From: Rhodosorus marinus CCMP1338
Lineage: Eukaryota > Plantae > Rhodophyta
Direction of reading: 5' to 3'
Assembly: GCA_029953675.1 (NCBI GenBank)
Contig: JAMWBK010000002.1
Location: 372,001-436,000 of the forward strand
DNA length: 64,000 nucleotides
Below the pieces are notes generated by a model, which saw only the letters and a list, made by a program, of their open reading frames with translations, made no database searches and had not been told where the DNA came from. Below are positions 3,001-28,270 of this stretch, piece by piece. A program made the translations under genes and the position numbers. Each line of letters starts with the position of its first letter. The first letter of the stretch is position 1.

Positions 3001-4435
3001 CCCTACTGCAAAACTCTCATCGATAAATGGTGGCGACAATGTGCTCACGAGAGACTCGTCAAGCGATAGCGCGACTCTTTTCAGGCTGACATCAACGTAA
3101 ATCACCCTAGCCTGCACCTTCTTGCCGACCTTGAGCTCGCTCTTATCGATACTTGGACTGAAATGAACCCCATCGACGCTTCCGTTGAATATGGACATGA
3201 AAGACATCGCCAAGCCATCGCTCTTACATTTCGTGATAGATCCTTTGACCAGAGCGCCTGCTCGAATGTTGGAAAGGGCCATCCCTTCGTGAACATCTGT
3301 GAGCGCATTGATGGTCGCTTCTTTCAACGCGGATACGCGAACTGAGCGCTTTCTCTTTCCGGAGGGAATGCTCTCATCGACAATGCACCAGAGGGGGGCG
3401 CCAATATGCAGTTTGTCTCCATTTTCGCACTTTTCGAACGCTAGGAAGGCAGTGAACGGTACGTGACCTCCAAGACTAACCACGTACCTGTGACATGGCA
3501 GAAATCCTTCAGTTAGATACTGCGAACAACGCTTACGAAGGGAAGACACGGTGAGACAGAGACAAGTCCGCTCTCAAGAAAAAGTCGATACGATCGATAC
3601 GTCCAGCAATGCAATGAGAGAAGATGCGCACCCATGCTCCTCCTTGCTCTTGACACATCCAAATAGTTGAAATCCTCTTGTTAGTTGAGGCCAGGAGAGG
3701 CCCCTGTTCAAAACTTTCAGATCTAGCGTGAGCTCAGTTCGTTTTCTCCCTGTTTTCGATTTGCCGATGTTTGCTACTGCAACTGGAATGACATCTCCAA
3801 CAGACAGGACACCAGCTAGCGGTCTAGTACCGACCTCTCCTACTCGACAACAGATTAAAGAGGTCATCAATGAGCGGCTAGCATCAAGGCCGATGTTTCC
3901 TCTGGGCGAAGGATCAGTGTTAAGCCTACCGGGGTCAGGCAAATCGATCAGTGAGTCTGAGGGGAAGCCTTCGTCTTCAATCATGAGGTCATCAGATTTC
4001 AGGTATCCAACAAGGTTGAACGGAAGCGACACTTCAATCGAATTGCGTCGAACAGACTTTACAACTCCAAGCATCAGCACCCCTTCTGAGAGTTGGGATA
4101 TTGTTCCTCTGAAAATCCTTCCCCTGGAAATGTCGTCAGCTTCGTCCTCTGCTGAAGATTTTCTCTTCTTTTTGGTCGATTTCTTCTGGTTTCCAGCTCG
4201 ATCGCTTTCCTTTCGTTTCCTGGCACGTCGTGAAGCAATCGTCGAACAAATTCGAAGATCAGAAATGAAGGCACAAACGCGCAGGTAGCACCAGAGGGGA
4301 GCCTCACCTTGTATCACTGAATATATTCTCGTCTCTCCCTCGCCTCTTTTTAACCGCGCTCCCACCGCGAGCCAAAGCTCCATGGTCACTTCCGCCACGC
4401 GGCAGAAGACCAACCGCTGAATCCTCCTTCCCCAT
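1..4435 (-). CDS. RRP5: rRNA biogenesis protein RRP5 (tandem S1 domains), multi-exon, 3' end runs off the left edge
   Basis: ATG at 4435 gives MGKEDSAVGLLPRGG (RRP5 N-terminal (F/L)PRGG motif). ORFs 3574-4413, 2908-3549, 2445-2930, 2140-2526, 2036-2218 and 104-1897 hold successive S1-like repeats (e.g. LVGYVIRMAPNAAIVAFAGGATGFVRKSRLSDEF, GKKVLGFVKSISNNVLWIAF), separated by short GT-AG introns. The C-terminal HAT repeats are not in the window. Confidence 0.9.
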
Positions 4436-5404
4436 TTTCTTCACGTAGTACCTCTCAGTATTCAAGCTTCTGCACCATGATTAACGATTACTCGAAAATT
4501 TCTGTCTCCAAAGAAGCTCTCAATACGACAGAAACTTTCCCAAACAAGTCATCGAACTCTGCCACTCTTCTTCCCGTTGGTTCTTCACCCCAAACTCAAA
4601 CGCGGCTGGATGACTCTTACAAGTCAATTTCGGTACTGGACATTCCCCCGAAAATACCTATTATTTAATTTTTAGTACTTTTTCTGACGTCAAGTGAATC
4701 CGTAAAATACGTTTACACGTCTCCCCTCTCCGTTCCCACGGTCCACGGCAATCCATTCCGGTCGTTGATTGGTCAACGAGAAAACCTTTTGGATTGAAAT
4801 CTAGGGTTTTTGATTGATGAGTATAGGTAAATGGAAGCAATAAAATTGTGTAATACAGTAATTAACGGTATAAATGCTTCAAATAAATTTAATTCTTTGC
4901 TTAAATATATTGAATACGTTCAAAATACTTAACGCGTGGATCGAGCTTGAGGAGATTGAGTAGACACTCCGCTCGGACCCACTTTCGGTGCGGTCGGAGG
5001 GTTGGGCTACTCCCCTGAATTCCAAACCTTACTGGTCTATGATACTTGGCTAGTTGAGCCATCTGATCTCGAAACCCGCTGACCTGCTCATCAGTACAGC
5101 TTTCAGCTACAGAGAAGCTTGCTTCCTAGACGACCCTCTTTGGGCATCTGTTCAAGCTCAAGAGGACTTTTGAATCTCTTGCGTCTTAACCTGGAGCAGT
5201 CTAGACGATGGTGAGCTTCTGGGTCTTTGTCCAAAGGTCCTGGTCGTTTACTCTACAAGAAGTTCAAGGCACTGAGCGTGATGTCAGGGATTTATGAACT
5301 GCCTAATCTGAACATGTTGATGGTTGCATGTTTGCATTTAAATAAGAAAGTGAAAAGGTCGCCCATTGAGCTCCGCCTCCATGGTCGGTCCATTAATTAT
5401 TCGC

Positions 5405-17045: not shown

Positions 17046-18534
17046 AGAATTTCCCTAAAAACTGTAAAGATTGTTATATAGAAATGCTTTAGGTACAAGA
17101 AAGGTCTATCTACGGTCTGGCCTTCTACCTCCCACCTCAAAGAAAGGGAGGCATGCGAGCGCATCGTTTAGAGCCTACTCTCCTTTTTTGGCCTGTGAAT
17201 ATTTCCTCTCCAGAACATTGAAGCCTCATTTTGCCATGAGAAAAAAAATAAATCAAAAACCAAAATATAGGTTCCTTCCATCCCCTGACTGAACCTCTTG
17301 ATTCTATTAAATCCTATTATTAGAAATCGCGTGCAAAATTGAAATAGAAGGAATATACTTTTGTTTTTATAAATATGAAACACAGATGTCATGTCAGGAC
17401 GTCACAAAAGCCTTAAGCCATTAAACAGGCTGTCCTCTGTCACCAACTATTTTTGGGTGATGTTCCTAGATTTTGGATTTGGGAGCGGTGGAAACTCGGC
17501 CCTCGAATTCGGCTTTCGCAGGGCAAGCGATTTGGTCTCCGTTCGAGTTCTGGGGTTCATTCTATGTACTGTATAGCACGCTGGTCCGCTCACAAGCATC
17601 CAGAGCAAGAGAGCGAGAGGGAGTAGAAGAGTGGGAGCGTGTGCAGAAGAAACAAAACTCCCAGACGATTGGATTCCGAACTTGAATCCTTACGTAGAGA
17701 GAGGCCTCCCCTTTTGATGCATCGAAATCAATAGTCAAGCGGGCTGGAAAGGTGTTGAGCGCCCCCTGCCCCCTCCCGCGGGGGGCGCAAACCCCACAAC
17801 TCTTTTTAACCTAACCTAACATCGGCCAAACCATCTGGGCCAAATAGAAACTTGGAAAAAAAAATTAAAAATTACACAGGATACACTTCACAAAAGCCTA
17901 TCTCGGAATCCTTTCAGCATTGCAAACCCACTTACCCCCACCCCCTTTTCACTCAACAACTCTTCAATCAAGATCTACCATCTCATCGTTCGTGATACTC
18001 AAATGTATTTCTTCAATACATAATATCTTCGATCTTACCGAATATTGATTGATCTATAAAATATCTGTATTCGGATTAGGCTTTTTCACTGGGGGTTCGA
18101 TGAAATGGATACTGGGATTTATAAGAGTTTTCTTTAGGCTTTTGAAAGTACATGTCATAGCTGGGAAACACCCCAAAAAACAAACAAATAGAGAGAGAAG
18201 GAATAAAAAATATATATATATGCCCAAAAAGGGGTCAAAATCGGCCGGTTTGAGGGGGGGGAAGGGGGACATGACCATTGGAATTAGGATTTGGAAGAGG
18301 TGTATTTAGTTTATAAAGGCCGGTTTGGTGCGGTGCTGGACGATGGGGCGGGCAAGGAGTGGGAATGGTTTTGGGTTCCGGGATTGGCTTTGGGCTGGAC
18401 TGAATCGAGTAGTTTAGGATGTGTTTGAGCTCTCGATCGAGGGTTTGAAGGCTGAGATTTTGTTGGGAAATCCTGAGTCTCTACGGAGTTTGTGTTTAAT
18501 CCGTGGGGTGGTTTTGAGTGGTTTTGGTCAGACC

Positions 18535-20030
18535 ATGATAGCAAAGCTGTTGGAGTTGCCGGATGAGATCTTGTTGCGGATTTTGGAGAAGCTGCCTGTT
18601 CGTCAGCTGATTTGCGTCCATCGATGGCAGTTTTTCCCGTGTGAGGAGTGCAGGCAGGATGGTGGATGTTCAGTGCCCGCCACCTGCCGAGCGTTCCAGC
18701 GATTTGCCCAGCACGATAGTGTGTGGAGGGGCCTGGTCGGCGCATATTTTGGCTCAAAGCTAGTCCTGAAACAAGGTGATGGGGACGGGGACATGATGGA
18801 TCTGGGAGAGGATGGGGAGAACATTTGCTTCACGGATTGGCACGAGCAGCACGGGACCATCTCTTTGGAGGAAGCGAGGGATCTCCTGGATGTACAGCTT
18901 CCTCATGTAGAGGGGTATGACTTGGACTGGAAAGAAGTCTTCCGAAGATTTGCGAATAGCTCGTTCCCCTCGATTCTTGACCACTTCGCAAGCACTGACG
19001 CATTCCCAGGGTGGGAGGTGAGGGCCGATGAAGGAATTATTTCGTGGGAGGATGAAGCTCCCCTAGGGTATGAACCAGCACCATCCTAAGAGTCTTTGCG
19101 TCCTTGTTGTCTTCTTCAGAATCTGAATGACTGCTTCGGTTGCAATAGGCGTGATAGGGCTGTCCGGAGTTCTGTTCCGTTCAGACTGGATGAGATGCAG
19201 TCTCCTACGGGAGCTCCTCGTCGTATTTCCAGCACACGGAGTGCCCTGAGGAGCCCGCCTTCAGGCGCTCTTTGCCTTCGCCCTGATATGGGCACTGGGT
19301 CAAAGAGGCTCAAGGTAGTAAAAACGAATGTGTATTACTACGAGGTAACTGTCCTTGGCCCTACGAATGCGCTCGCTGCTGATGAGGTGAGAACTGTTTC
19401 GTTCGCGAGTGGATAGCTTTTTGCACGGAGCATGGACGGGAGCTAATGGGCTTTTCTCTTCTGCATTTTTGCGATTAGTCTGTCCTGCCGTGTATTTGCG
19501 TTGGGATAACAAGAAACAGGAACGAAATGGAGATGCAACCTGGATGGACAAGCTGCAGCTTCGGAATTCACAGCGACGACGGAAACATTTTCCACGGGAC
19601 TTTGTCAGAAAACTACGTCGATGCGAAGTTTGACGTCGGCGATACAATTGGATGTGGTATCCGGTTTGAACCTGGAGAGGGGTCTCTGGGAAGGTTCCAA
19701 GTGTTTTTCACGAAGAACGGAAAGTTCTTGTGCGTGCCGTTTCCTCGTTCTGTGTAAGTGATACGGATAAGTCGACTGTCGGCTTTTCTAGAAGGCGTAT
19801 TCCCAGAGATATGATTGGGATGTGCTAATTGATTACTGTGTTGTTCCATATGCAGGCACATGCGGATGCAATCGATCCACTACAATTCCTGCTTCTATCC
19901 TGTTGTCGGAATTGATGCACATAGGATCGCGTTCAAGGCAAACTTTGGAAAATCTCCGTTCAGATATAACCCTGACCTCGTGGAACGTGACATGATCCCG
20001 TTTTATCATCGGGTGAAATCCGGCCTGTAG
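18535..20030 (+). CDS. F-box plus SPRY (RanBP9/Ssh4-like) domain protein
   Basis: F-box LLELPDEILLRILEKLPVRQL at the start. SPRY motifs YYYEVTV, FDVGDTIGCGI, VFFTKNGKFL, FYPVVG, KANFGKSPFRY in downstream exons. Stop 20030. Confidence 0.85.
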
Positions 20031-23000
20031 TGAATTCCAGTTCCGCTCGTAGCCGCTCTTTATTGATCCCTAACGTGCATGAGCACCTACAATTAAGTAC
20101 TCGATCGGGTAGTCGACGGTCGCGTACTACGAGGACGAAAGACCGCGAAGTTCTTGCTCATCACGGAGTACATAAGAGCCGATAAGCATGTTGGGAAGAA
20201 CATGCTGCTTTAGGGCTGGCTGAGAAAACCAATGGTATCCCAAAGGGAGTGAAGTACCCACTATTTTATACTTGCGGAAAGACGCGGAGGAGGGAGCGAA
20301 TCAGCACATAGAGTTTAACTGGCCCACAGTCCAGAAAGTTAGAAATGGTCATTTGTCCAGAGTATTATAGTCGTGGGATTGTTCAAAATGAGGAAGAGCA
20401 GCCTTAGTTGTAAATACATATATTAAAAGAAACTCATTTTTCCGGGACCGGTGTTTGATTTCGTTTAACAGCTCGTAATTGAACCACCACTCTTTCGAAA
20501 GGACAAGGCAGAAAGTCCATCACCAACCCCTGCCTTCTCGCTTCCCCGCAGTGGCTGAGGCCCAGTAATTGATGAAATGAGTCTCCAAAGTGAAACTCTA
20601 AACTCAGGCGTGACGTTAAAAGACGGAATAGTAGCGTCAACAGGGGTCGAAGCACTGAAAATCCTCAAAGTCAGGCTGCGGTCGATACTATTAAGATTAA
20701 AACATGTTTTGACGATTGGAGTATCCACAGCCGCCTAAATTGAAGGATGCGTTAAGCACCGTGGTTTCGTAATTGGCGGCCAGCGGAAGGGGGGACGTAC
20801 GCGAAATGCCGGCCCGTCAAAATTGGCTGACGGAGAGCTGAGAGCTACATCCCTAAAATGTCGTTCCTAGCGAAACCACTGTATCCCGCAATGCTTCGCC
20901 TGTCCAATTCATTTCTCATGTTGGTTCTGCATCGGCCGCTGTGTGTGGTGGGCGGAGGTGGAGGACCTATAATGCTTTTCAGGCGTTCGCTGCGATTATG
21001 ATTCAGTCTTCAACGTCGCACCTGAGTCCAGTTGATCTAACATCATTTGTGTACTCCTCAGACTCGTATCCAGTCATGTTAGTGGCTTGGCGTAGTCCTT
21101 GCTGTCGCTGAGCAAACCCCAAGCAATCTTATATCACTCAAACTGCGCAATTTCCTTGCCCAAATCATTGAAAACATTTACACTTCGGGTCTCAAAATGG
21201 AGTTCCTCTTTTCCAGCACGACCGTCTTCTGTTCAAACGAACCATCTGATCTTGATTTCGAGCATGCAGTGAGTGAAAACGTTCATCACTAGTTTGCCCT
21301 AACAATCGAAAAGGTGGCGGTCGAATGAGCAAATTCCCGCCATCGTGTTCGCCAGCTTATCTTTCACGGGTTGATCTTCGCTGCCTAAGCACGCCCAGAG
21401 TTTCAGGTCATTGCAATTGATCAACAGAGTCTCAGACTCGTTCAGCTACATAAGCGTCCAATTTCACGAAGAATCCTGGGTGATAGGAACTTGGAACCGT
21501 AACCTAGCATGTTCATATGCGTCTTGGTGACCTCGTCGCCAACACGCCTTTCAACATGAGCTCGTCAGAACTGACAAGTCCGCACAGCTTCACAAACAAA
21601 CGACTATTCAGTCAAGTTTGTCTCATCAGTCAATATCATGCTTAGTCAGTCCATTTCATGCTTAATCAGTCAATTTAGTGAATGGATGAAGAACTGTTGC
21701 CAAGTTTTCTTTTTTAGTAGTTTCTTTGAAACGTCGTCGTTTCAAAGGCAGTTTTTTAACTAATAAATAGGCCACAGAAATGTAAAATTTTGAAACGGAG
21801 CTTCATGATTAAGGACAGTTTGGTGGTCGTGGATCCTTTTTTTTCTAACTGGACTTTGCGTGGGGAAGTTCTACATGTGGAATCAGCAGATTTCTTGACA
21901 TGCATTGGCTTGACGGTAGAGCTGGGATTTTCTGTAGTTACGGAAGAGCATACATTTATTTTGTGAGATCCCCGGCATGTACATGAAGATCAACGAAAAC
22001 CGAACTTCGGATTCTGAGGCGGTGATCGTCTTATGCTTCGGTTGTGAGAACGAAAGAAAACTAGAGAGATCCTGAAAAAAAAGTGAGCTTTCTGATGTCT
22101 CAGAGGGTATGGCTCGCGTTGTCAGCTGCTAAACGACCAAGATGAGCAGCAAAACGGATACCTGTGACGTAAGAAATGCCACAGCACAGTTGGAAAGCCT
22201 GAAGGACAGAGAAACACGCAGGAGAAAAAAAAAGCCGAGCGATACCTGATCATCAAAGATCTTCATGATCCTTGCGAGTGAATACTACTCATTCTAACCT
22301 CCCCAAGGCGCTTCCGAATACATGGACCGCCCGCACCAAAAGGCCAGACCGAAGCACCCTTCCAGATCAACTCAAATTTGATCCATCTTACCTTACATTA
22401 AGAACGTCCCCCTAAAATGAAAGTTCCATTTTTAAAAAGGCGCGTTTCCCAAATGAAGGGCCCAATGTTCTTCAAGAAACGGACCCTTTATTAGATTTGT
22501 TTTTATTTTTTGTTGGCCATCGAACTGAAAAGTTAAGAAAATTAGGGCCAAAAAAACAGAGACCAAAAAAACAAACTGAAAGGACTATTTCTGGAGATTT
22601 TTGTATAAAAGTCCGAGTTTTGGAAAGCTATTCAGGTGGGGAAGCAAGGAAGGACGGGAAGGAGGGAGTGGGGATGGGGAAGGTTGGAGAGGTGTTAGGA
22701 TCATTTGGTCTTTTATTATCTGATAGATGTCTATTGTTGATTTTCTGAGATCTGCTTTTTTTATTTTGCCTCGTATTTTGAGGAAGAACGAGTTGGGACA
22801 AGTGCGTGGGACAAGGAGTCGGGTGGGGAAGGGGGGCGGTCTTGAAGAATCTGGTTTTAGTTGAAGCTCTGGAAACTTGTTTTGCGTTTTCTCCGAGTTT
22901 GACCTGTTTATGTGTGTTCTGTTAAGTAGTCAGAGTGGCTTTGTGTTTCGTAGAAGAGGAATTGGTATTGCGCTTTTGCTTGGCTGCTGGGGCTCTAGCT

Positions 23001-23310
23001 TTGTGGGCTTAAAGAGTCGTCTTGGCCTGGAGCCGAGCTCCTTGGTTCCCGTGTTGGATTGTTTTTTATAGAGAGTTACGAGAAGCGAAAGACGAGCTTT
23101 AGCTCTCTTTGGCTGTAGTGATTACGCTTGTTTTTAAAAGTCGGCGTTCGACAAGGCCTACGTGTTGACATGTCTTGAAGCTCGGAAGTTTATTGTTTTC
23201 GTGTAGCTGGACTTTTTAGAAGCGCTGGGGCGAGTGTGAGTTCGTGTGTGTTCCGCTTTGGGCGTGGTGATTATTAGAAGAAGGATTAATTTCCATTGAA
23301 TTGAGTCGAG

Positions 23311-23988
23311 ATGCCAGTGAAAACTTGGGCTCGAAACGAGATTGTGCAGCTCAATGTTGGGGGCCAGAAGTTTTCTACCACTGTGGATACTCTCACAAAA
23401 GAAACGGACTCTATGTTAGGGGTTTGGTTTAGTGGCCGTCACGATATCCGGTTGGACTCAGAAGGGAGGGTCTTCATTGATCGAGACGGGTTTAGGTTTC
23501 GACACATTCTGAATTTCTTGAGAAACGGGAGTGTGCATATTGCAGGGGATATCGTAACTTACCAGGAGATATTGGAGGAAGCCCGGTACTTTGGTAGGTT
23601 CATGCCTTCCCTTCGCGTTCATTGATTGCGTGCGTGCTCTTGGATGTGTTTTTTTTGTAGCATTGCTGACACCTGGTCCTTTCGCACAGGGATTGTCTCA
23701 TTGGCAAAAAGACTTATAGAGGAGATTCAGAAGTTGGAAGCCTTGGGACACGAGGACAACATGGATAACATCATGACCTCTCAAACCTCGAATAGTAGCG
23801 GCGTTAACCCAGAGAACGCGAACCCCGCTTTGCTGCTAACAGGATCCTGGCTTCTGCAGAAGAATCAAGCTCAAGCAGCGAAGTCGAGCCAAGCTCCAGA
23901 GACCGCGGAGGGTGGAGACGACTCGACCTCAGTTTTAACACAATCCCACCAAACGGAGTACCGATTCAGCCTCGATGAAGATTTCTAG
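23311..23988 (+). CDS. KCTD-type BTB/POZ domain protein (2 exons)
   Basis: IVQLNVGGQKFSTTVDTL...SMLGVWFSG...VFIDRDGFRFRHILNFLR...EEARYFG is a canonical T1/KCTD BTB. Intron ~23595-23690, then a helical/low-complexity tail ending YRFSLDEDF*. Confidence 0.9.
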
Positions 23989-24401
23989 TTTTGGGCGGTG
24001 TGTTGATTCGCCGTCTTCTCGAGAGGGCTTTCTCTATTTACTATTAACAGTTTTCCTTTTAATCCCAATCTGCGCGGCCGAAGCTCGAAGTGAACGGGCT
24101 TGTACAGTTATTGTTCTTGGGCTGCTTTGCGGCTGGCCATACGCGAATGCATTACAAGCAAAAGAAGAAAAACGCGTTTTCCGTAACGCTTCGTTTTAGT
24201 CGTGTTTTGTTTTCTCGACTTTTAGCCCGTTCAATGATTTTTTGGATATCAACAAGTTAGAATGGTTGGGTGTTCCAGCTTGATGCTATGTCAGGCTACA
24301 GGAACAGCATACATAAGCCATTCCTGTCTTTCGACAGCAGTTGCCGGACTGGATAAATGATAGGCCGGATAGCTTGATTTGAATCCCTTGTGCATGGGTA
24401 T

Positions 24402-28270
<3,869 letters not shown>

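What the first reader, a model, noticed from the sequence alone, without database searches (positions are those of the whole stretch)
23965..23988. BTB protein ends in FSLDEDF-COOH, an apparent mimic of the ribonucleotide reductase R2 docking peptide
Seen: the KCTD-type BTB gene ends ...TEYRFSLDEDF* after a low-complexity linker. Established: class Ia RNR small subunits bind the large subunit through a C-terminal heptapeptide (mammalian FTLDADF, yeast Rnr2 FTFNEDF), and such peptides inhibit RNR. KCTD BTB domains oligomerise and many recruit Cullin-3. Inference: this could be an oligomeric R1-binding regulator, either a competitive RNR inhibitor or a Cul3 adaptor that captures R1 by R2 mimicry. 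I know of no described system like this. A match in both sequence and terminal position is hard to attribute to chance.
Basis: partly seen in the sequence, partly recalled or inferred. Interest (0 to 1): 0.82.

Follow-up and report, generated by a model that had tools for sequence, protein, structure and literature searches.

The report
BTB protein carrying an RNR R2 tail

Summary
Window 23311-23988 (+) is a two-exon Rhodosorus marinus gene (193 aa, identical to KAJ8907334.1) with a KCTD-type BTB_2 domain, a helix, a predicted disordered ~65-aa linker and the C-terminus FSLDEDF. A cDNA contig confirms the splice and the stop codon.

The tail is not chance:
- Two relatives keep the last 14 residues unchanged despite many synonymous changes, while the linker diverges.
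- At least 17 distinct single-BTB_2 proteins from three red-algal classes, Picozoa, a dictyochophyte, a cercozoan and metagenomes end in [FL]-x-[LIM]-D-x-[DE]-F.
- In a sampled metagenome census, 114 of 120 ORFs ending F-x-L-D-E-D-F-stop are genuine RNR R2 subunits.
- The conserved tail positions (1, 3, 4, 6, 7 and the free carboxylate) are the published R1-contact positions.
- A separate thioredoxin-like family (32 of 32 full-length members) carries the same tail, so the tail is a portable module.

Best reading: an oligomeric R2-tail decoy that docks on R1. Whether it acts as an inhibitor or as a Cul3 adaptor is unresolved. R1 binding was not shown, and the alga's own R2 could not be retrieved. 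I found no published precedent.

The parts
22818..23310 (+). 5'UTR, minimum extent supported by cDNA
   Evidence: cDNA contig L003 nt 1-824 aligns to window 22818-23594. The ATG is at 23311.
23311..23593 (+). CDS exon 1 (aa 1-94 plus the first base of Gly95)
   Evidence: ORF and donor CTTTG|GTAGGT. The junction is confirmed by cDNA.
23594..23689 (+). Intron, 96 nt, GT..AG, phase 1
   Evidence: Absent from cDNA L003. The orthologue L001 has an intron at the same position and phase.
23690..23988 (+). CDS exon 2 (aa 95-193) including the TAG stop at 23986-23988
   Evidence: The product is identical to KAJ8907334.1.
23344..23703 (+). BTB_2 (KCTD/T1-type) domain, aa 12-99, interrupted by the intron
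   Evidence: Pfam PF02214 E=4.7e-19. Best PDB match is KCTD7 8i79, E=2.7e-19. AF2 pLDDT is above 90.
23695..23772 (+). Helix following the BTB domain, aa 97-122
   Evidence: AF2 helix H97-126, confident to about aa 115. Equivalent charged helices are present in the relatives.
23773..23964 (+). Predicted disordered, fast-evolving linker, aa 123-186
   Evidence: pLDDT below 50. 29 of 62 aligned residues differ and there are 6 gap positions against orthologue L001.
23818..23859 (+). Conserved hydrophobic island ANPALLLTGSWLLQ (aa 138-151) within the linker; function unknown
   Evidence: Identical in the 58%-identical orthologue although the flanks diverged. Not seen in more distant family members.
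23944..23985 (+). Conserved C-terminal block SHQTEYRFSLDEDF (aa 180-193)
   Evidence: 14 of 14 residues identical to L001 with 9 of 14 codons changed synonymously. There are 4 synonymous and 0 amino-acid changes against the second strain.
23965..23985 (+). R2-type docking heptapeptide FSLDEDF with a free C-terminal carboxylate
   Evidence: It is the same heptapeptide that ends most of the 114 sampled R2 ORFs and 23 of 120 R2 fragments. Its contact positions match the published R1-peptide structure.
23989..24401 (+). 3'UTR/intergenic stretch up to the stop codon of the convergent AlaRS gene
   Evidence: The cDNA is collinear from the exon 2 start to 24538, so there is no splice after the stop. 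The AlaRS stop at 24402-24404 (-) was read from the sequence.

Best explanation
The gene encodes a small KCTD-type BTB_2 protein. Its folded, self-associating N-terminal module displays the authentic C-terminal docking heptapeptide of the class Ia ribonucleotide reductase small subunit (R2) on a long disordered linker. The most likely mechanism is that the tail inserts into the R2-tail pocket of the large subunit R1. F187 and L189 would occupy the hydrophobic subsite, and D192, F193 and the terminal carboxylate the basic subsite. Because BTB_2 domains form tetramers or pentamers, the protein would present several tails and bind R1 dimers or hexamers with avidity. It would then occupy the site that R2 needs, acting as a catalytically dead R2 decoy and a negative regulator of dNTP synthesis. 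It may additionally hand R1 to Cullin-3.

Shown here: the gene model, the domain, the disorder prediction, that the tail is the same as real R2 tails, purifying selection on the tail, family-wide conservation, and a second non-R2 family with the same tail.

Inferred: oligomeric state, physical R1 binding, and the inhibitory outcome.
For: 1. The tail is real and expressed.
2. FSLDEDF is a genuine R2 tail. 114 of 120 sampled metagenomic ORFs ending F-x-L-D-E-D-F-stop are R2, classified with a tail-less R2 query. In another R2 sample, FSLDEDF is the second most common tail, 23 of 120. Human and mouse R2 and p53R2 end FTLDADF.
3. Purifying selection acts on the tail. The last 14 aa are identical to a 58%-identical orthologue with 9 synonymous codon changes, while the linker is about 47% diverged with indels. 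Against a second strain there are 27 synonymous and 6 non-synonymous codon changes, and none of the amino-acid changes is in the tail.
4. Family conservation. 17 of 81 single-BTB_2 proteins retrieved end in the motif or a close variant. They include Galdieria FRLDEDF, Porphyridium LVLDEDF, Picozoa FAADAEF, Octactis FTMDEEF and Mataza FTIDADF. About 0.01 would be expected by chance in the set, and about 0.4 even across all 19,164 BTB hits. Their BTB domains cluster together: the nearest neighbour is tail-bearing for 11 of 17, against 5 of 64 for the others.
5. The tail logos of the BTB, R2 and thioredoxin-like families are nearly identical. Positions 1, 3, 4, 6 and 7 are fixed and positions 2 and 5 vary. 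This matches the published contacts of the peptide on yeast R1 (PMC3483043).
6. The heptapeptide alone binds R1, inhibits RNR and was used to purify R1, and its pocket is highly conserved among eukaryotic R1s (PMC3483043 and PMC9221315).
7. Independent support comes from a thioredoxin-like family, the protein class that reduces R1. It carries the same tail in 32 of 32 full-length members.
8. The architecture of a folded core, a disordered linker (pLDDT below 50) and a terminal motif mirrors R2 itself.
Against: There is no binding, structural or genetic evidence, and everything about R1 is inferred. Rhodosorus' own R1 and R2 could not be retrieved, so identity with the species' own R2 tail is untested. 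Some family members, the Picozoa-like group, have degenerate tails (FSADAEF, FAADAEF, FANADF, FGSIDF, FNREDF). Ala at position 3 or shortened spacing was not seen among 117 sampled R2 tails, which could mean weaker binding, a co-evolved pocket or another receptor. The window's tail also fits generic acidic-aromatic C-terminal motif classes (CAP-Gly EEY/F-type and class III PDZ ligands; regexes recalled from memory). The profile used included tail columns, which inflates the fraction of tail-bearing proteins in the top 150, although it does not affect the chance calculation.
Confidence: 0.7

Rival explanations
1. Cul3 substrate adaptor. This uses the same R2-tail docking on R1, but the main role of the BTB domain is to recruit Cullin-3, so that R1 (or R1-bound proteins) is ubiquitinated and degraded or otherwise modified. 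It is a variant of the best explanation that differs in the downstream outcome.
For: The BTB domain is KCTD-type. The best PDB matches include Cul3 adaptors: KCTD7, KCTD10 and KCTD13 (named 'adapter for CUL3-mediated RhoA degradation'), SHKBP1, KCTD9, and KCTD5/17. All the tail evidence listed for the best explanation applies equally.
Against: The next-best PDB matches (KCTD1, KCTD15, KCTD16) are, from my own knowledge, KCTDs that do not bind Cul3, so sequence similarity does not discriminate. No Cul3-contact residues were tested. The presence of Cul3 in Rhodosorus was not checked. Substrate capture by a terminal short motif on the adaptor, rather than by a folded domain, is unusual.
Confidence: 0.25
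2. A positive or neutral R1 partner. The tail docks on R1, but the protein acts as a holding factor, localisation anchor or scaffold. For example, it could protect the R2 pocket of free R1, or tether R1 to another partner bound by the conserved ANPALLLTGSWLLQ island, rather than inhibit it.
For: The thioredoxin-like family shows that the same tail is used to deliver a helper protein to R1, not only to block it. A second conserved island in the linker suggests another binding function.
Against: The island is lineage-specific and absent from most family members. A BTB domain has no known catalytic or helper function for RNR. Occupying the R2 pocket is intrinsically competitive with R2.
Confidence: 0.1
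3. The tail is a functional C-terminal motif for a receptor other than R1. Candidates are a CAP-Gly domain (EEY/F-type ligand), a class III PDZ domain, or an unknown factor that also recognises R2 tails, such as a shared degradation or transport receptor.
For: DEDF-COOH is acidic-aromatic like the EEY/F motifs (own knowledge). Degenerate tails in the Picozoa-like subgroup depart from typical R2 tails.
Against: Family members FTIDADF, FTLDCDF, FQLDAEF and FSADAEF lack the three acidic residues or the position -2 acid that those motif classes need, yet they keep the R1-contact positions F1, L3, D4, [DE]6 and F7. 95% of sampled proteins with this ending are R2. The only other family found with it is a redoxin, a known R1 partner class.
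Confidence: 0.08
4. Chance resemblance or annotation artefact: the ending has no function, or the true transcript ends elsewhere.
For: None was found. A priori, short acidic C-termini are common.
Against: cDNA confirms the end. There is purifying selection on the tail. The motif recurs in at least 17 distinct proteins from six named lineages, against a chance expectation below 1.
Confidence: 0.01

Closest known systems
C-terminal tail of class Ia RNR small subunit R2 (mammalian FTLDADF, yeast Rnr2 FTFNEDF, and FSLDEDF, the commonest tail in the metagenome sample)
   Same: It has the same heptapeptide, at the extreme C-terminus with a free carboxylate and preceded by a disordered linker on an oligomeric core. 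The logo is identical at the R1-contact positions.
   Different: There is no ferritin-like di-iron/tyrosyl-radical domain, and Pfam finds only BTB_2. The protein therefore cannot support catalysis. The linker is about 65 aa, against roughly 8-15 aa between the conserved NFFEKRV...GV block and the tail in the sampled R2s.
Synthetic R2 C-terminal peptides and peptidomimetics (Ac-FTLDADF 'P7', P6; HSV YAGAVVNDL)
   Same: The principle is the same: an R2-tail sequence without R2 occupies the R1 pocket and competitively inhibits holoenzyme formation (PMC3483043, PMC9221315).
   Different: Those are laboratory compounds and monovalent. This is a natural, genetically encoded, presumably multivalent protein that is conserved in several eukaryotic lineages.
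Protein inhibitors and regulators of RNR: Sml1, Hug1 and Dif1 (budding yeast), Spd1 (fission yeast), IRBIT (mammals)
   Same: They are small, largely disordered proteins that bind RNR subunits and restrain dNTP synthesis. This is the proposed physiological role (own knowledge; reviews listed).
   Different: They are unrelated in sequence, and only BTB_2/BTB_3 were hit in Pfam. To my knowledge none of them works by carrying the R2 C-terminal heptapeptide, and none has an oligomerising BTB domain. That is recalled knowledge, not tested here.
KCTD family BTB proteins (KCTD7, KCTD10/13, KCTD1, KCTD5 and others)
   Same: It has a BTB_2 domain with E=1e-19 to 1e-11 against KCTD structures that are deposited as 4-5-chain oligomers, followed by a helix.
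   Different: There is no folded C-terminal substrate-binding domain. Instead there is a disordered linker ending in another enzyme's subunit-docking peptide. Cul3 binding is unknown.
Redoxins dedicated to RNR (NrdH; glutaredoxin domain fused to NrdB) - relevant to the thioredoxin-like family noticed in passing
   Same: The idea is the same: a thiol reductant is brought physically to RNR (own knowledge).
   Different: Here the targeting device would be the R2 tail appended to a Thioredoxin_8-type protein. It is neither a fusion to R2 nor a separate NrdH-type specificity.

Membership tests
KCTD/T1-type BTB proteins (Pfam BTB_2, PF02214) | BTB_2 domain scoring above the Pfam gathering threshold | tested here: met
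   69 bits against a cut-off of 21.4, aa 12-99. KCTD7 and other KCTD structures match at E=1e-19 to 1e-11, much better than Kv4 T1 at about 1e-9. The AF2 BTB fold has pLDDT above 90.
KCTD/T1-type BTB proteins (Pfam BTB_2, PF02214) | Homo-oligomerisation (tetramer or pentamer) | not testable with these tools
   Only single-chain prediction was available. The matching PDB entries hold 4-5 chains, which is suggestive only.
Cul3-RING ligase substrate adaptors (the KCTD subset) | Direct binding of the BTB domain to the Cullin-3 N-terminal domain | not testable with these tools
   The closest PDB relatives include both Cul3 binders and KCTDs that, from my own knowledge, do not bind Cul3. No diagnostic sequence motif was evaluated.
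Class Ia RNR small subunit R2 (ferritin-like, Ribonuc_red_sm) | Ferritin-like di-iron/tyrosyl radical domain | tested here: not met
   The Pfam scan finds only BTB_2 and a weak BTB_3 hit. A tail-less R2 query does not match BTB proteins. The protein is not an R2.
R2-type C-terminal R1-docking motif ([FLI]-x-[LFIM]-[DNE]-x-[DE]-F-COOH) | The heptapeptide lies at the extreme C-terminus and matches the natural R2 tail repertoire | tested here: met
   FSLDEDF plus stop. The same string ends most of the 114 sampled R2 ORFs and 23 of 120 R2 fragments.
R2-type C-terminal R1-docking motif ([FLI]-x-[LFIM]-[DNE]-x-[DE]-F-COOH) | The R1-contact residues (F1, L3, D4, D6, F7, carboxylate) are conserved and positions 2 and 5 are free | tested here: met
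   Logos compared with the structural contacts in PMC3483043. Purifying selection is shown.
R2-type C-terminal R1-docking motif ([FLI]-x-[LFIM]-[DNE]-x-[DE]-F-COOH) | The motif is presented on a flexible, disordered segment | tested here: met
   pLDDT is below 50 for aa 123-193. The linker is variable in length and sequence across the family.
R2-type C-terminal R1-docking motif ([FLI]-x-[LFIM]-[DNE]-x-[DE]-F-COOH) | Physical binding to the R1 peptide pocket | not testable with these tools
   No multimer modelling or experiment was possible, and Rhodosorus R1 was not retrieved.
R2-type C-terminal R1-docking motif ([FLI]-x-[LFIM]-[DNE]-x-[DE]-F-COOH) | Match to the same organism's own R2 tail | not tested
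   There is no R2 gene in the window. The word search lists only the best 120 hits.
Sml1/Spd1/Hug1/Dif1-type RNR inhibitors | Sequence relationship to these families | tested here: not met
   The Pfam-A scan at E<=0.1 returned only BTB_2 and BTB_3. The protein may work like them (negative regulation of RNR) but it is not a member.
CAP-Gly EEY/F-type C-terminal ligands | Three acidic residues closely preceding a terminal aromatic residue, conserved across the family | tested here: not met
   The window tail DEDF would fit. Family members FTIDADF, FTLDCDF, FQLDAEF and FSADAEF do not. The motif definition is recalled from memory.

The most novel reading that the evidence does not exclude
The R2 C-terminal heptapeptide is a portable 'address label' for the RNR large subunit that eukaryotic microbes have attached to unrelated proteins. 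One is a BTB_2 oligomer that couples R1 to Cullin-3 ubiquitination or sequesters it. That would be the first natural regulator, and possibly the first E3 adaptor, to capture its target by impersonating the target's partner subunit. The other is a thioredoxin-like protein that acts as a tail-docked, dedicated RNR reductant. Together they would define a previously unrecognised layer of dNTP-pool control in red algae, Picozoa and some SAR lineages.
Probability: 0.3. Interest if true: 0.9.

Novelty: new variant of a known kind. Interest (0 to 1): 0.82.

Why it matters
RNR is the bottleneck of DNA-precursor synthesis, and its control is a classic problem. The known protein inhibitors (Sml1, Spd1, IRBIT) are lineage-restricted, and none is known for algae. 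A natural multivalent R2-tail decoy would be a new regulatory principle: subunit mimicry by a short terminal motif on an oligomerising scaffold. It would also be nature's version of a strategy that pharmacologists have pursued for decades with R2-derived peptides.

The parallel thioredoxin-like family suggests that the tail is a general R1-targeting module. That gives a simple sequence rule for finding RNR partners in any eukaryotic proteome. Both ideas can be tested directly with a few recombinant proteins, because the R1 pocket is conserved from yeast to mammals.

Tried and rejected
1. Looking for the alga's own R2.
- tblastn of human R2 against the window found nothing.
- The collection-wide DNA scan for the tail needed 14 fully specified bases (error). 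I therefore fixed Leu to CTN and the stop to TAR, choosing from codon usage.
When rerun, it returned only anonymous short R2 fragments, with listing capped at 120.
- So neither the own-species comparison nor the tail covariation test (Mataza, Octactis, Porphyridium, Galdieria, Picozoa) could be done.

2. Looking up the contig of the Mataza protein: not on record.

3. Literature searches for a precedent found none. The terms were FSLDEDF/FTLDADF/FTFNEDF; KCTD + cullin + RNR; tail mimic; thioredoxin docking; and Sml1/Spd1/IRBIT. Two further calls failed on term length. The library lacks most subscription journals, so absence there is weak evidence.

4. KEN, D-box and PIP-box motifs in the linkers: the only D-box-like hits common to the family lie inside the BTB fold, so I rejected them as meaningless.

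5. CAP-Gly, PDZ class III, AP2 FxDxF, FFAT and LIR readings of the tail: I considered them and rejected them because they are not conserved across the family (motif definitions from memory).

6. The four very short 'other' ORFs of the census (L085, L089, L104, L113) have no R2, BTB or Trx similarity nearby and were treated as chance or unresolved.
Full report
**1. The observation**

Window 23965-23988 reads TTC AGC CTC GAT GAA GAT TTC TAG, which is FSLDEDF plus stop. It ends a two-exon gene on the + strand: exon 1 23311-23593, a 96-nt GT..AG phase-1 intron 23594-23689, and exon 2 23690-23988. The 193-aa product has one Pfam domain, BTB_2 (aa 12-99, E=4.7e-19, 69 bits against a cut-off of 21.4).

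The spliced product is identical to NCBI KAJ8907334.1, 'hypothetical protein NDN08_007448' of the red alga Rhodosorus marinus. A 97%-identical complete ORF exists in MMETSP transcriptomes. Its cDNA contig (IMG 3300016967, L003) aligns to the window with the intron removed exactly as modelled. It is collinear through the stop codon and the 3'UTR until it merges with the convergent alanyl-tRNA synthetase transcript.

AlphaFold2, run on a six-sequence alignment, gives pLDDT above 90 for the BTB fold (aa ~10-95), a helix from aa 97 to about 122, and pLDDT below 50 for aa 123-193. The layout is a folded module, a helix, a disordered linker and a terminal motif.

**2. Is the tail selected?**

A 58%-identical orthologue lies on Logan contig SRR22824290_10644 (L001). 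Its intron is at the same position and phase. That intron is 144 nt, in frame and free of stops, so the automatic gene call read through it.

| Region | Identical residues | Notes |
|---|---|---|
| BTB domain | 86 of 99 | |
| Linker | 33 of 62 | plus 6 gap positions |
| Last 14 residues (SHQTEYRFSLDEDF) | 14 of 14 | 9 of 14 codons changed synonymously |

Against the second Rhodosorus strain the CDS has 27 synonymous and 6 non-synonymous codon differences. Four synonymous changes and no amino-acid change fall in the last eight codons. The tail is under purifying selection.

**3. Is it a family feature?**

Among the 61 word-search hits, other short single-BTB_2 proteins end in FSADAEF, FSLTEDF, FTIDADF and FGSIDF. 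An exhaustive profile search of 1.84 billion representatives found 19,164 BTB hits. Its top 150 added proteins ending FRLDEDF, FTMDEEF, LVLDEDF, LKLDEDF, FTLDCDF, FQLDAEF, FAADAEF, FANADF, FNREDF, FDAEDF and FSLNDSF.

The named sources are:

| Organism | Lineage | Tail |
|---|---|---|
| Rhodosorus marinus | red alga (the window) | FSLDEDF |
| Galdieria yellowstonensis | red alga | FRLDEDF |
| Porphyridium purpureum (annotated 'KCTD21') | red alga | LVLDEDF |
| Picozoa sp. COSAG01 | Picozoa | FAADAEF |
| Octactis speculum | dictyochophyte | FTMDEEF |
| Mataza sp. D1 | cercozoan | FTIDADF |

All those scanned contain BTB_2 and nothing else.

The strict motif [FL]x[LIMFA][DNT]x[DE]F is C-terminal in 12 of 204 retrieved proteins, against 2 of 65,216 internal positions. 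The expected number is about 0.01. Even if all 19,164 BTB hits are taken as the pool, chance predicts only about 0.4. One caveat is that the profile contained the tail columns. That enriches tail-bearing proteins in the top list but cannot create them.

Counting looser variants, 17 of 81 single-BTB proteins carry the tail. Their BTB domains are each other's nearest neighbours in 11 of 17 cases, against 5 of 64 for proteins without the tail. This is a coherent family with a red-algal subgroup, a Picozoa-like subgroup and a mixed subgroup.

**4. Is it really an R2 tail?**

I scanned the metagenome collection for DNA encoding F-[S/T/..]-L-D-E-D-F-stop. The pattern had to be narrowed to CTN-Leu and TAR stops. 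I classified the ORF ending at each match with tail-less queries. Of the 120, 114 are R2 subunits, 53-76% identical to human R2, with the typical ...NFFEKRVGxYQKxGV-(8-15 aa)-FSLDEDF ending. None are BTB, and six are 'other'.

A second sample of 120 R2 C-terminal fragments gave FTLDADF 26, FSLDEDF 23, FKLDEDF 6, FSLDADF 6 and FTLDEDF 5. It also held rarer variants such as FTIDADF, FNLDCDF, FSLDEEF and L-x-F-[DN]-x-D-F. PDB sequences confirm FTLDADF for human RRM2, mouse R2 and p53R2. A paper reports QIx[FL]DEDF for Plasmodium R2_e2 (PMC3824934).

The position-by-position logos of the BTB tails, the R2 tails and the thioredoxin-like tails (section 5) are nearly identical: F(L) / S,T,x / L / D / E,A / D(E) / F. 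According to the structural review PMC3483043:
- F1 and L3 fill a hydrophobic subsite on R1.
- D6, F7 and the terminal carboxylate bind a basic subsite.
- D4 pairs with a lysine.
- Positions 2 and 5 make few contacts.

This is exactly the conservation pattern seen in the BTB family. The free heptapeptide is sufficient to bind R1, was used to purify R1, and inhibits mouse and yeast RNR at micromolar concentration. Its pocket is described as highly conserved among eukaryotic R1s (PMC3483043, PMC9221315).

**5. An unexpected second family**

Two of the six non-R2 ORFs in the census (L116, L034) are homologous thioredoxin-fold proteins. Pfam matches Thioredoxin_8, AhpC-TSA and Redoxin, and the active site reads WTTKCVKCP. 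Both end in FTLDEDF, and L034 is split by an intron on a 63% GC contig.

A search with L116 found 39 relatives. All 32 full-length ones (153-221 aa, down to 44% identity) end in an R2-type heptapeptide after a variable Ala/Pro/Thr/Ser-rich linker: FTLDEDF 15, FSLDEDF 7, LVLDEDF 4, FVLDEDF 2 and four singletons. The seven without it are truncated fragments. One copy lies in a compact, gene-dense eukaryotic genome next to kinesin and GRASP genes.

Thioredoxin-type proteins are the physiological reductants of R1 (established knowledge). The simplest reading is that the tail docks this redoxin on R1. This shows independently that the R2 heptapeptide works as a portable module outside R2, and on a protein whose client is R1.

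**6. Mechanism**

Shown here:
- The gene model and its expression.
- A KCTD-type BTB domain (best PDB matches KCTD7, Plasmodium K13 BTB, KCTD10/13, KCTD1, KCTD16, SHKBP1, KCTD9, KCTD5/17; Kv4 T1 much weaker).
- The disorder of the linker.
- That the tail is the same as genuine R2 tails, and selection on it.
- Family-wide conservation.

Inferred:
- The BTB module oligomerises, as KCTD domains do.
- The tails bind the R2 pocket of R1.

On that basis the protein is a catalytically dead, multivalent R2 decoy. I commit to R1 docking at 0.7. For the outcome, I favour competitive inhibition or sequestration of R1 as a negative regulator of dNTP synthesis. A Cul3-adaptor role is the main variant at 0.25, because PDB similarity includes both Cul3-binding KCTDs and ones that, from my own knowledge, do not bind Cul3, and so does not discriminate. 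A helper or anchoring role is at about 0.1, a different receptor at about 0.08, and chance at about 0.01.

Points against the best explanation:
- There is no binding evidence.
- The species' own R2 and R1 were not obtained.
- The Picozoa-like subgroup has degenerate tails (Ala at position 3, or a six-residue spacing) that were not seen among 117 sampled R2 tails.

**7. Comparison with what is known**

The protein is a member of the BTB_2/KCTD superfamily (tested, met). It is not an R2, because it has no ferritin-like domain (tested, not met). It is not related to Sml1, Spd1, Hug1 or Dif1 (Pfam scan, not met). It would work like the synthetic R2-peptide inhibitors in using the same pocket, and like Sml1-type proteins in restraining RNR.

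I found no paper describing a natural protein that carries an R2 tail, or a KCTD-RNR link. The searchable library is incomplete, so this is weak negative evidence.

I rate it a new variant of a known kind: known parts and a known inhibitory principle, in a combination not previously described as a natural system. The more radical reading is given under the novel case.

**8. Limits**

The own-species R2 comparison, multimer modelling and any Cul3 test could not be run. All functional statements about R1 are inference from sequence and from the literature.

Noticed in passing
L116:620-1087 (-), L034:~4101-4666 (-), L124:2694-3170; proteins P0349-P0380: A thioredoxin-like family (Pfam Thioredoxin_8/Redoxin/AhpC-TSA, active site W-[HT]-x-K-C-V-[KR]-C) from unidentified microbial eukaryotes. 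All 32 full-length members end in an R2-type heptapeptide (FTLDEDF 15, FSLDEDF 7, LVLDEDF 4 and others) after a variable Ala/Pro/Thr-rich linker. It is a candidate tail-docked, RNR-dedicated reductant, and I found no published description.
   Followed up: partly
window 23818-23859: A hydrophobic island, ANPALLLTGSWLLQ, sits inside the otherwise fast-evolving disordered linker. It is identical in the 58%-identical orthologue but absent from more distant family members. It may be a second binding motif or a short amphipathic helix; function unknown.
   Followed up: partly
window 24402-28022 (-): A convergent, multi-intron alanyl-tRNA synthetase gene ends (stop 24402-24404) only 413 nt from the BTB stop codon. 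The transcriptome assembly joins both genes into one contig, which suggests that the 3' ends of the two transcripts overlap or abut.
   Followed up: partly
window 22818-23310: The 5'UTR is at least ~490 nt long according to the cDNA alignment. It contains purine-rich GGGAAGG-type tracts just upstream and at its start (about 22640-22700 and 22800-22835) and an upstream ORF (22877-23071 in the ORF list). Possible translational control; not analysed.
   Followed up: no
L001:448-1395: The public gene call for the orthologue (P0002, 315 aa) is a mis-model. It reads through a 144-nt in-frame, stop-free intron and starts 70 codons upstream of the conserved ATG. The spliced product is 197 aa.
   Followed up: yes
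proteins P0067-P0128: The top of the exhaustive BTB_2 profile search is dominated by proteins with 2-8 tandem BTB_2 domains (for example P0067, 953 aa, 8 matched stretches) from unidentified sources. Among the 204 proteins analysed, 123 have more than one BTB_2 domain.
   Followed up: no
window 18421-19089 (+): An ORF fragment contains an F-box-like sequence (LLELPDEILLRILEKLPVRQL), so another ubiquitin-ligase adaptor type gene lies about 4 kb upstream. It has no evident link to the finding.
   Followed up: no
L085, L089, L104, L113: Four metagenome loci encode F-x-L-D-E-D-F-stop at the end of very short ORFs (7-17 aa), with no R2, BTB or thioredoxin similarity detected anywhere on the locus. 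They may be chance matches or terminal micro-exons of unknown genes.
   Followed up: partly
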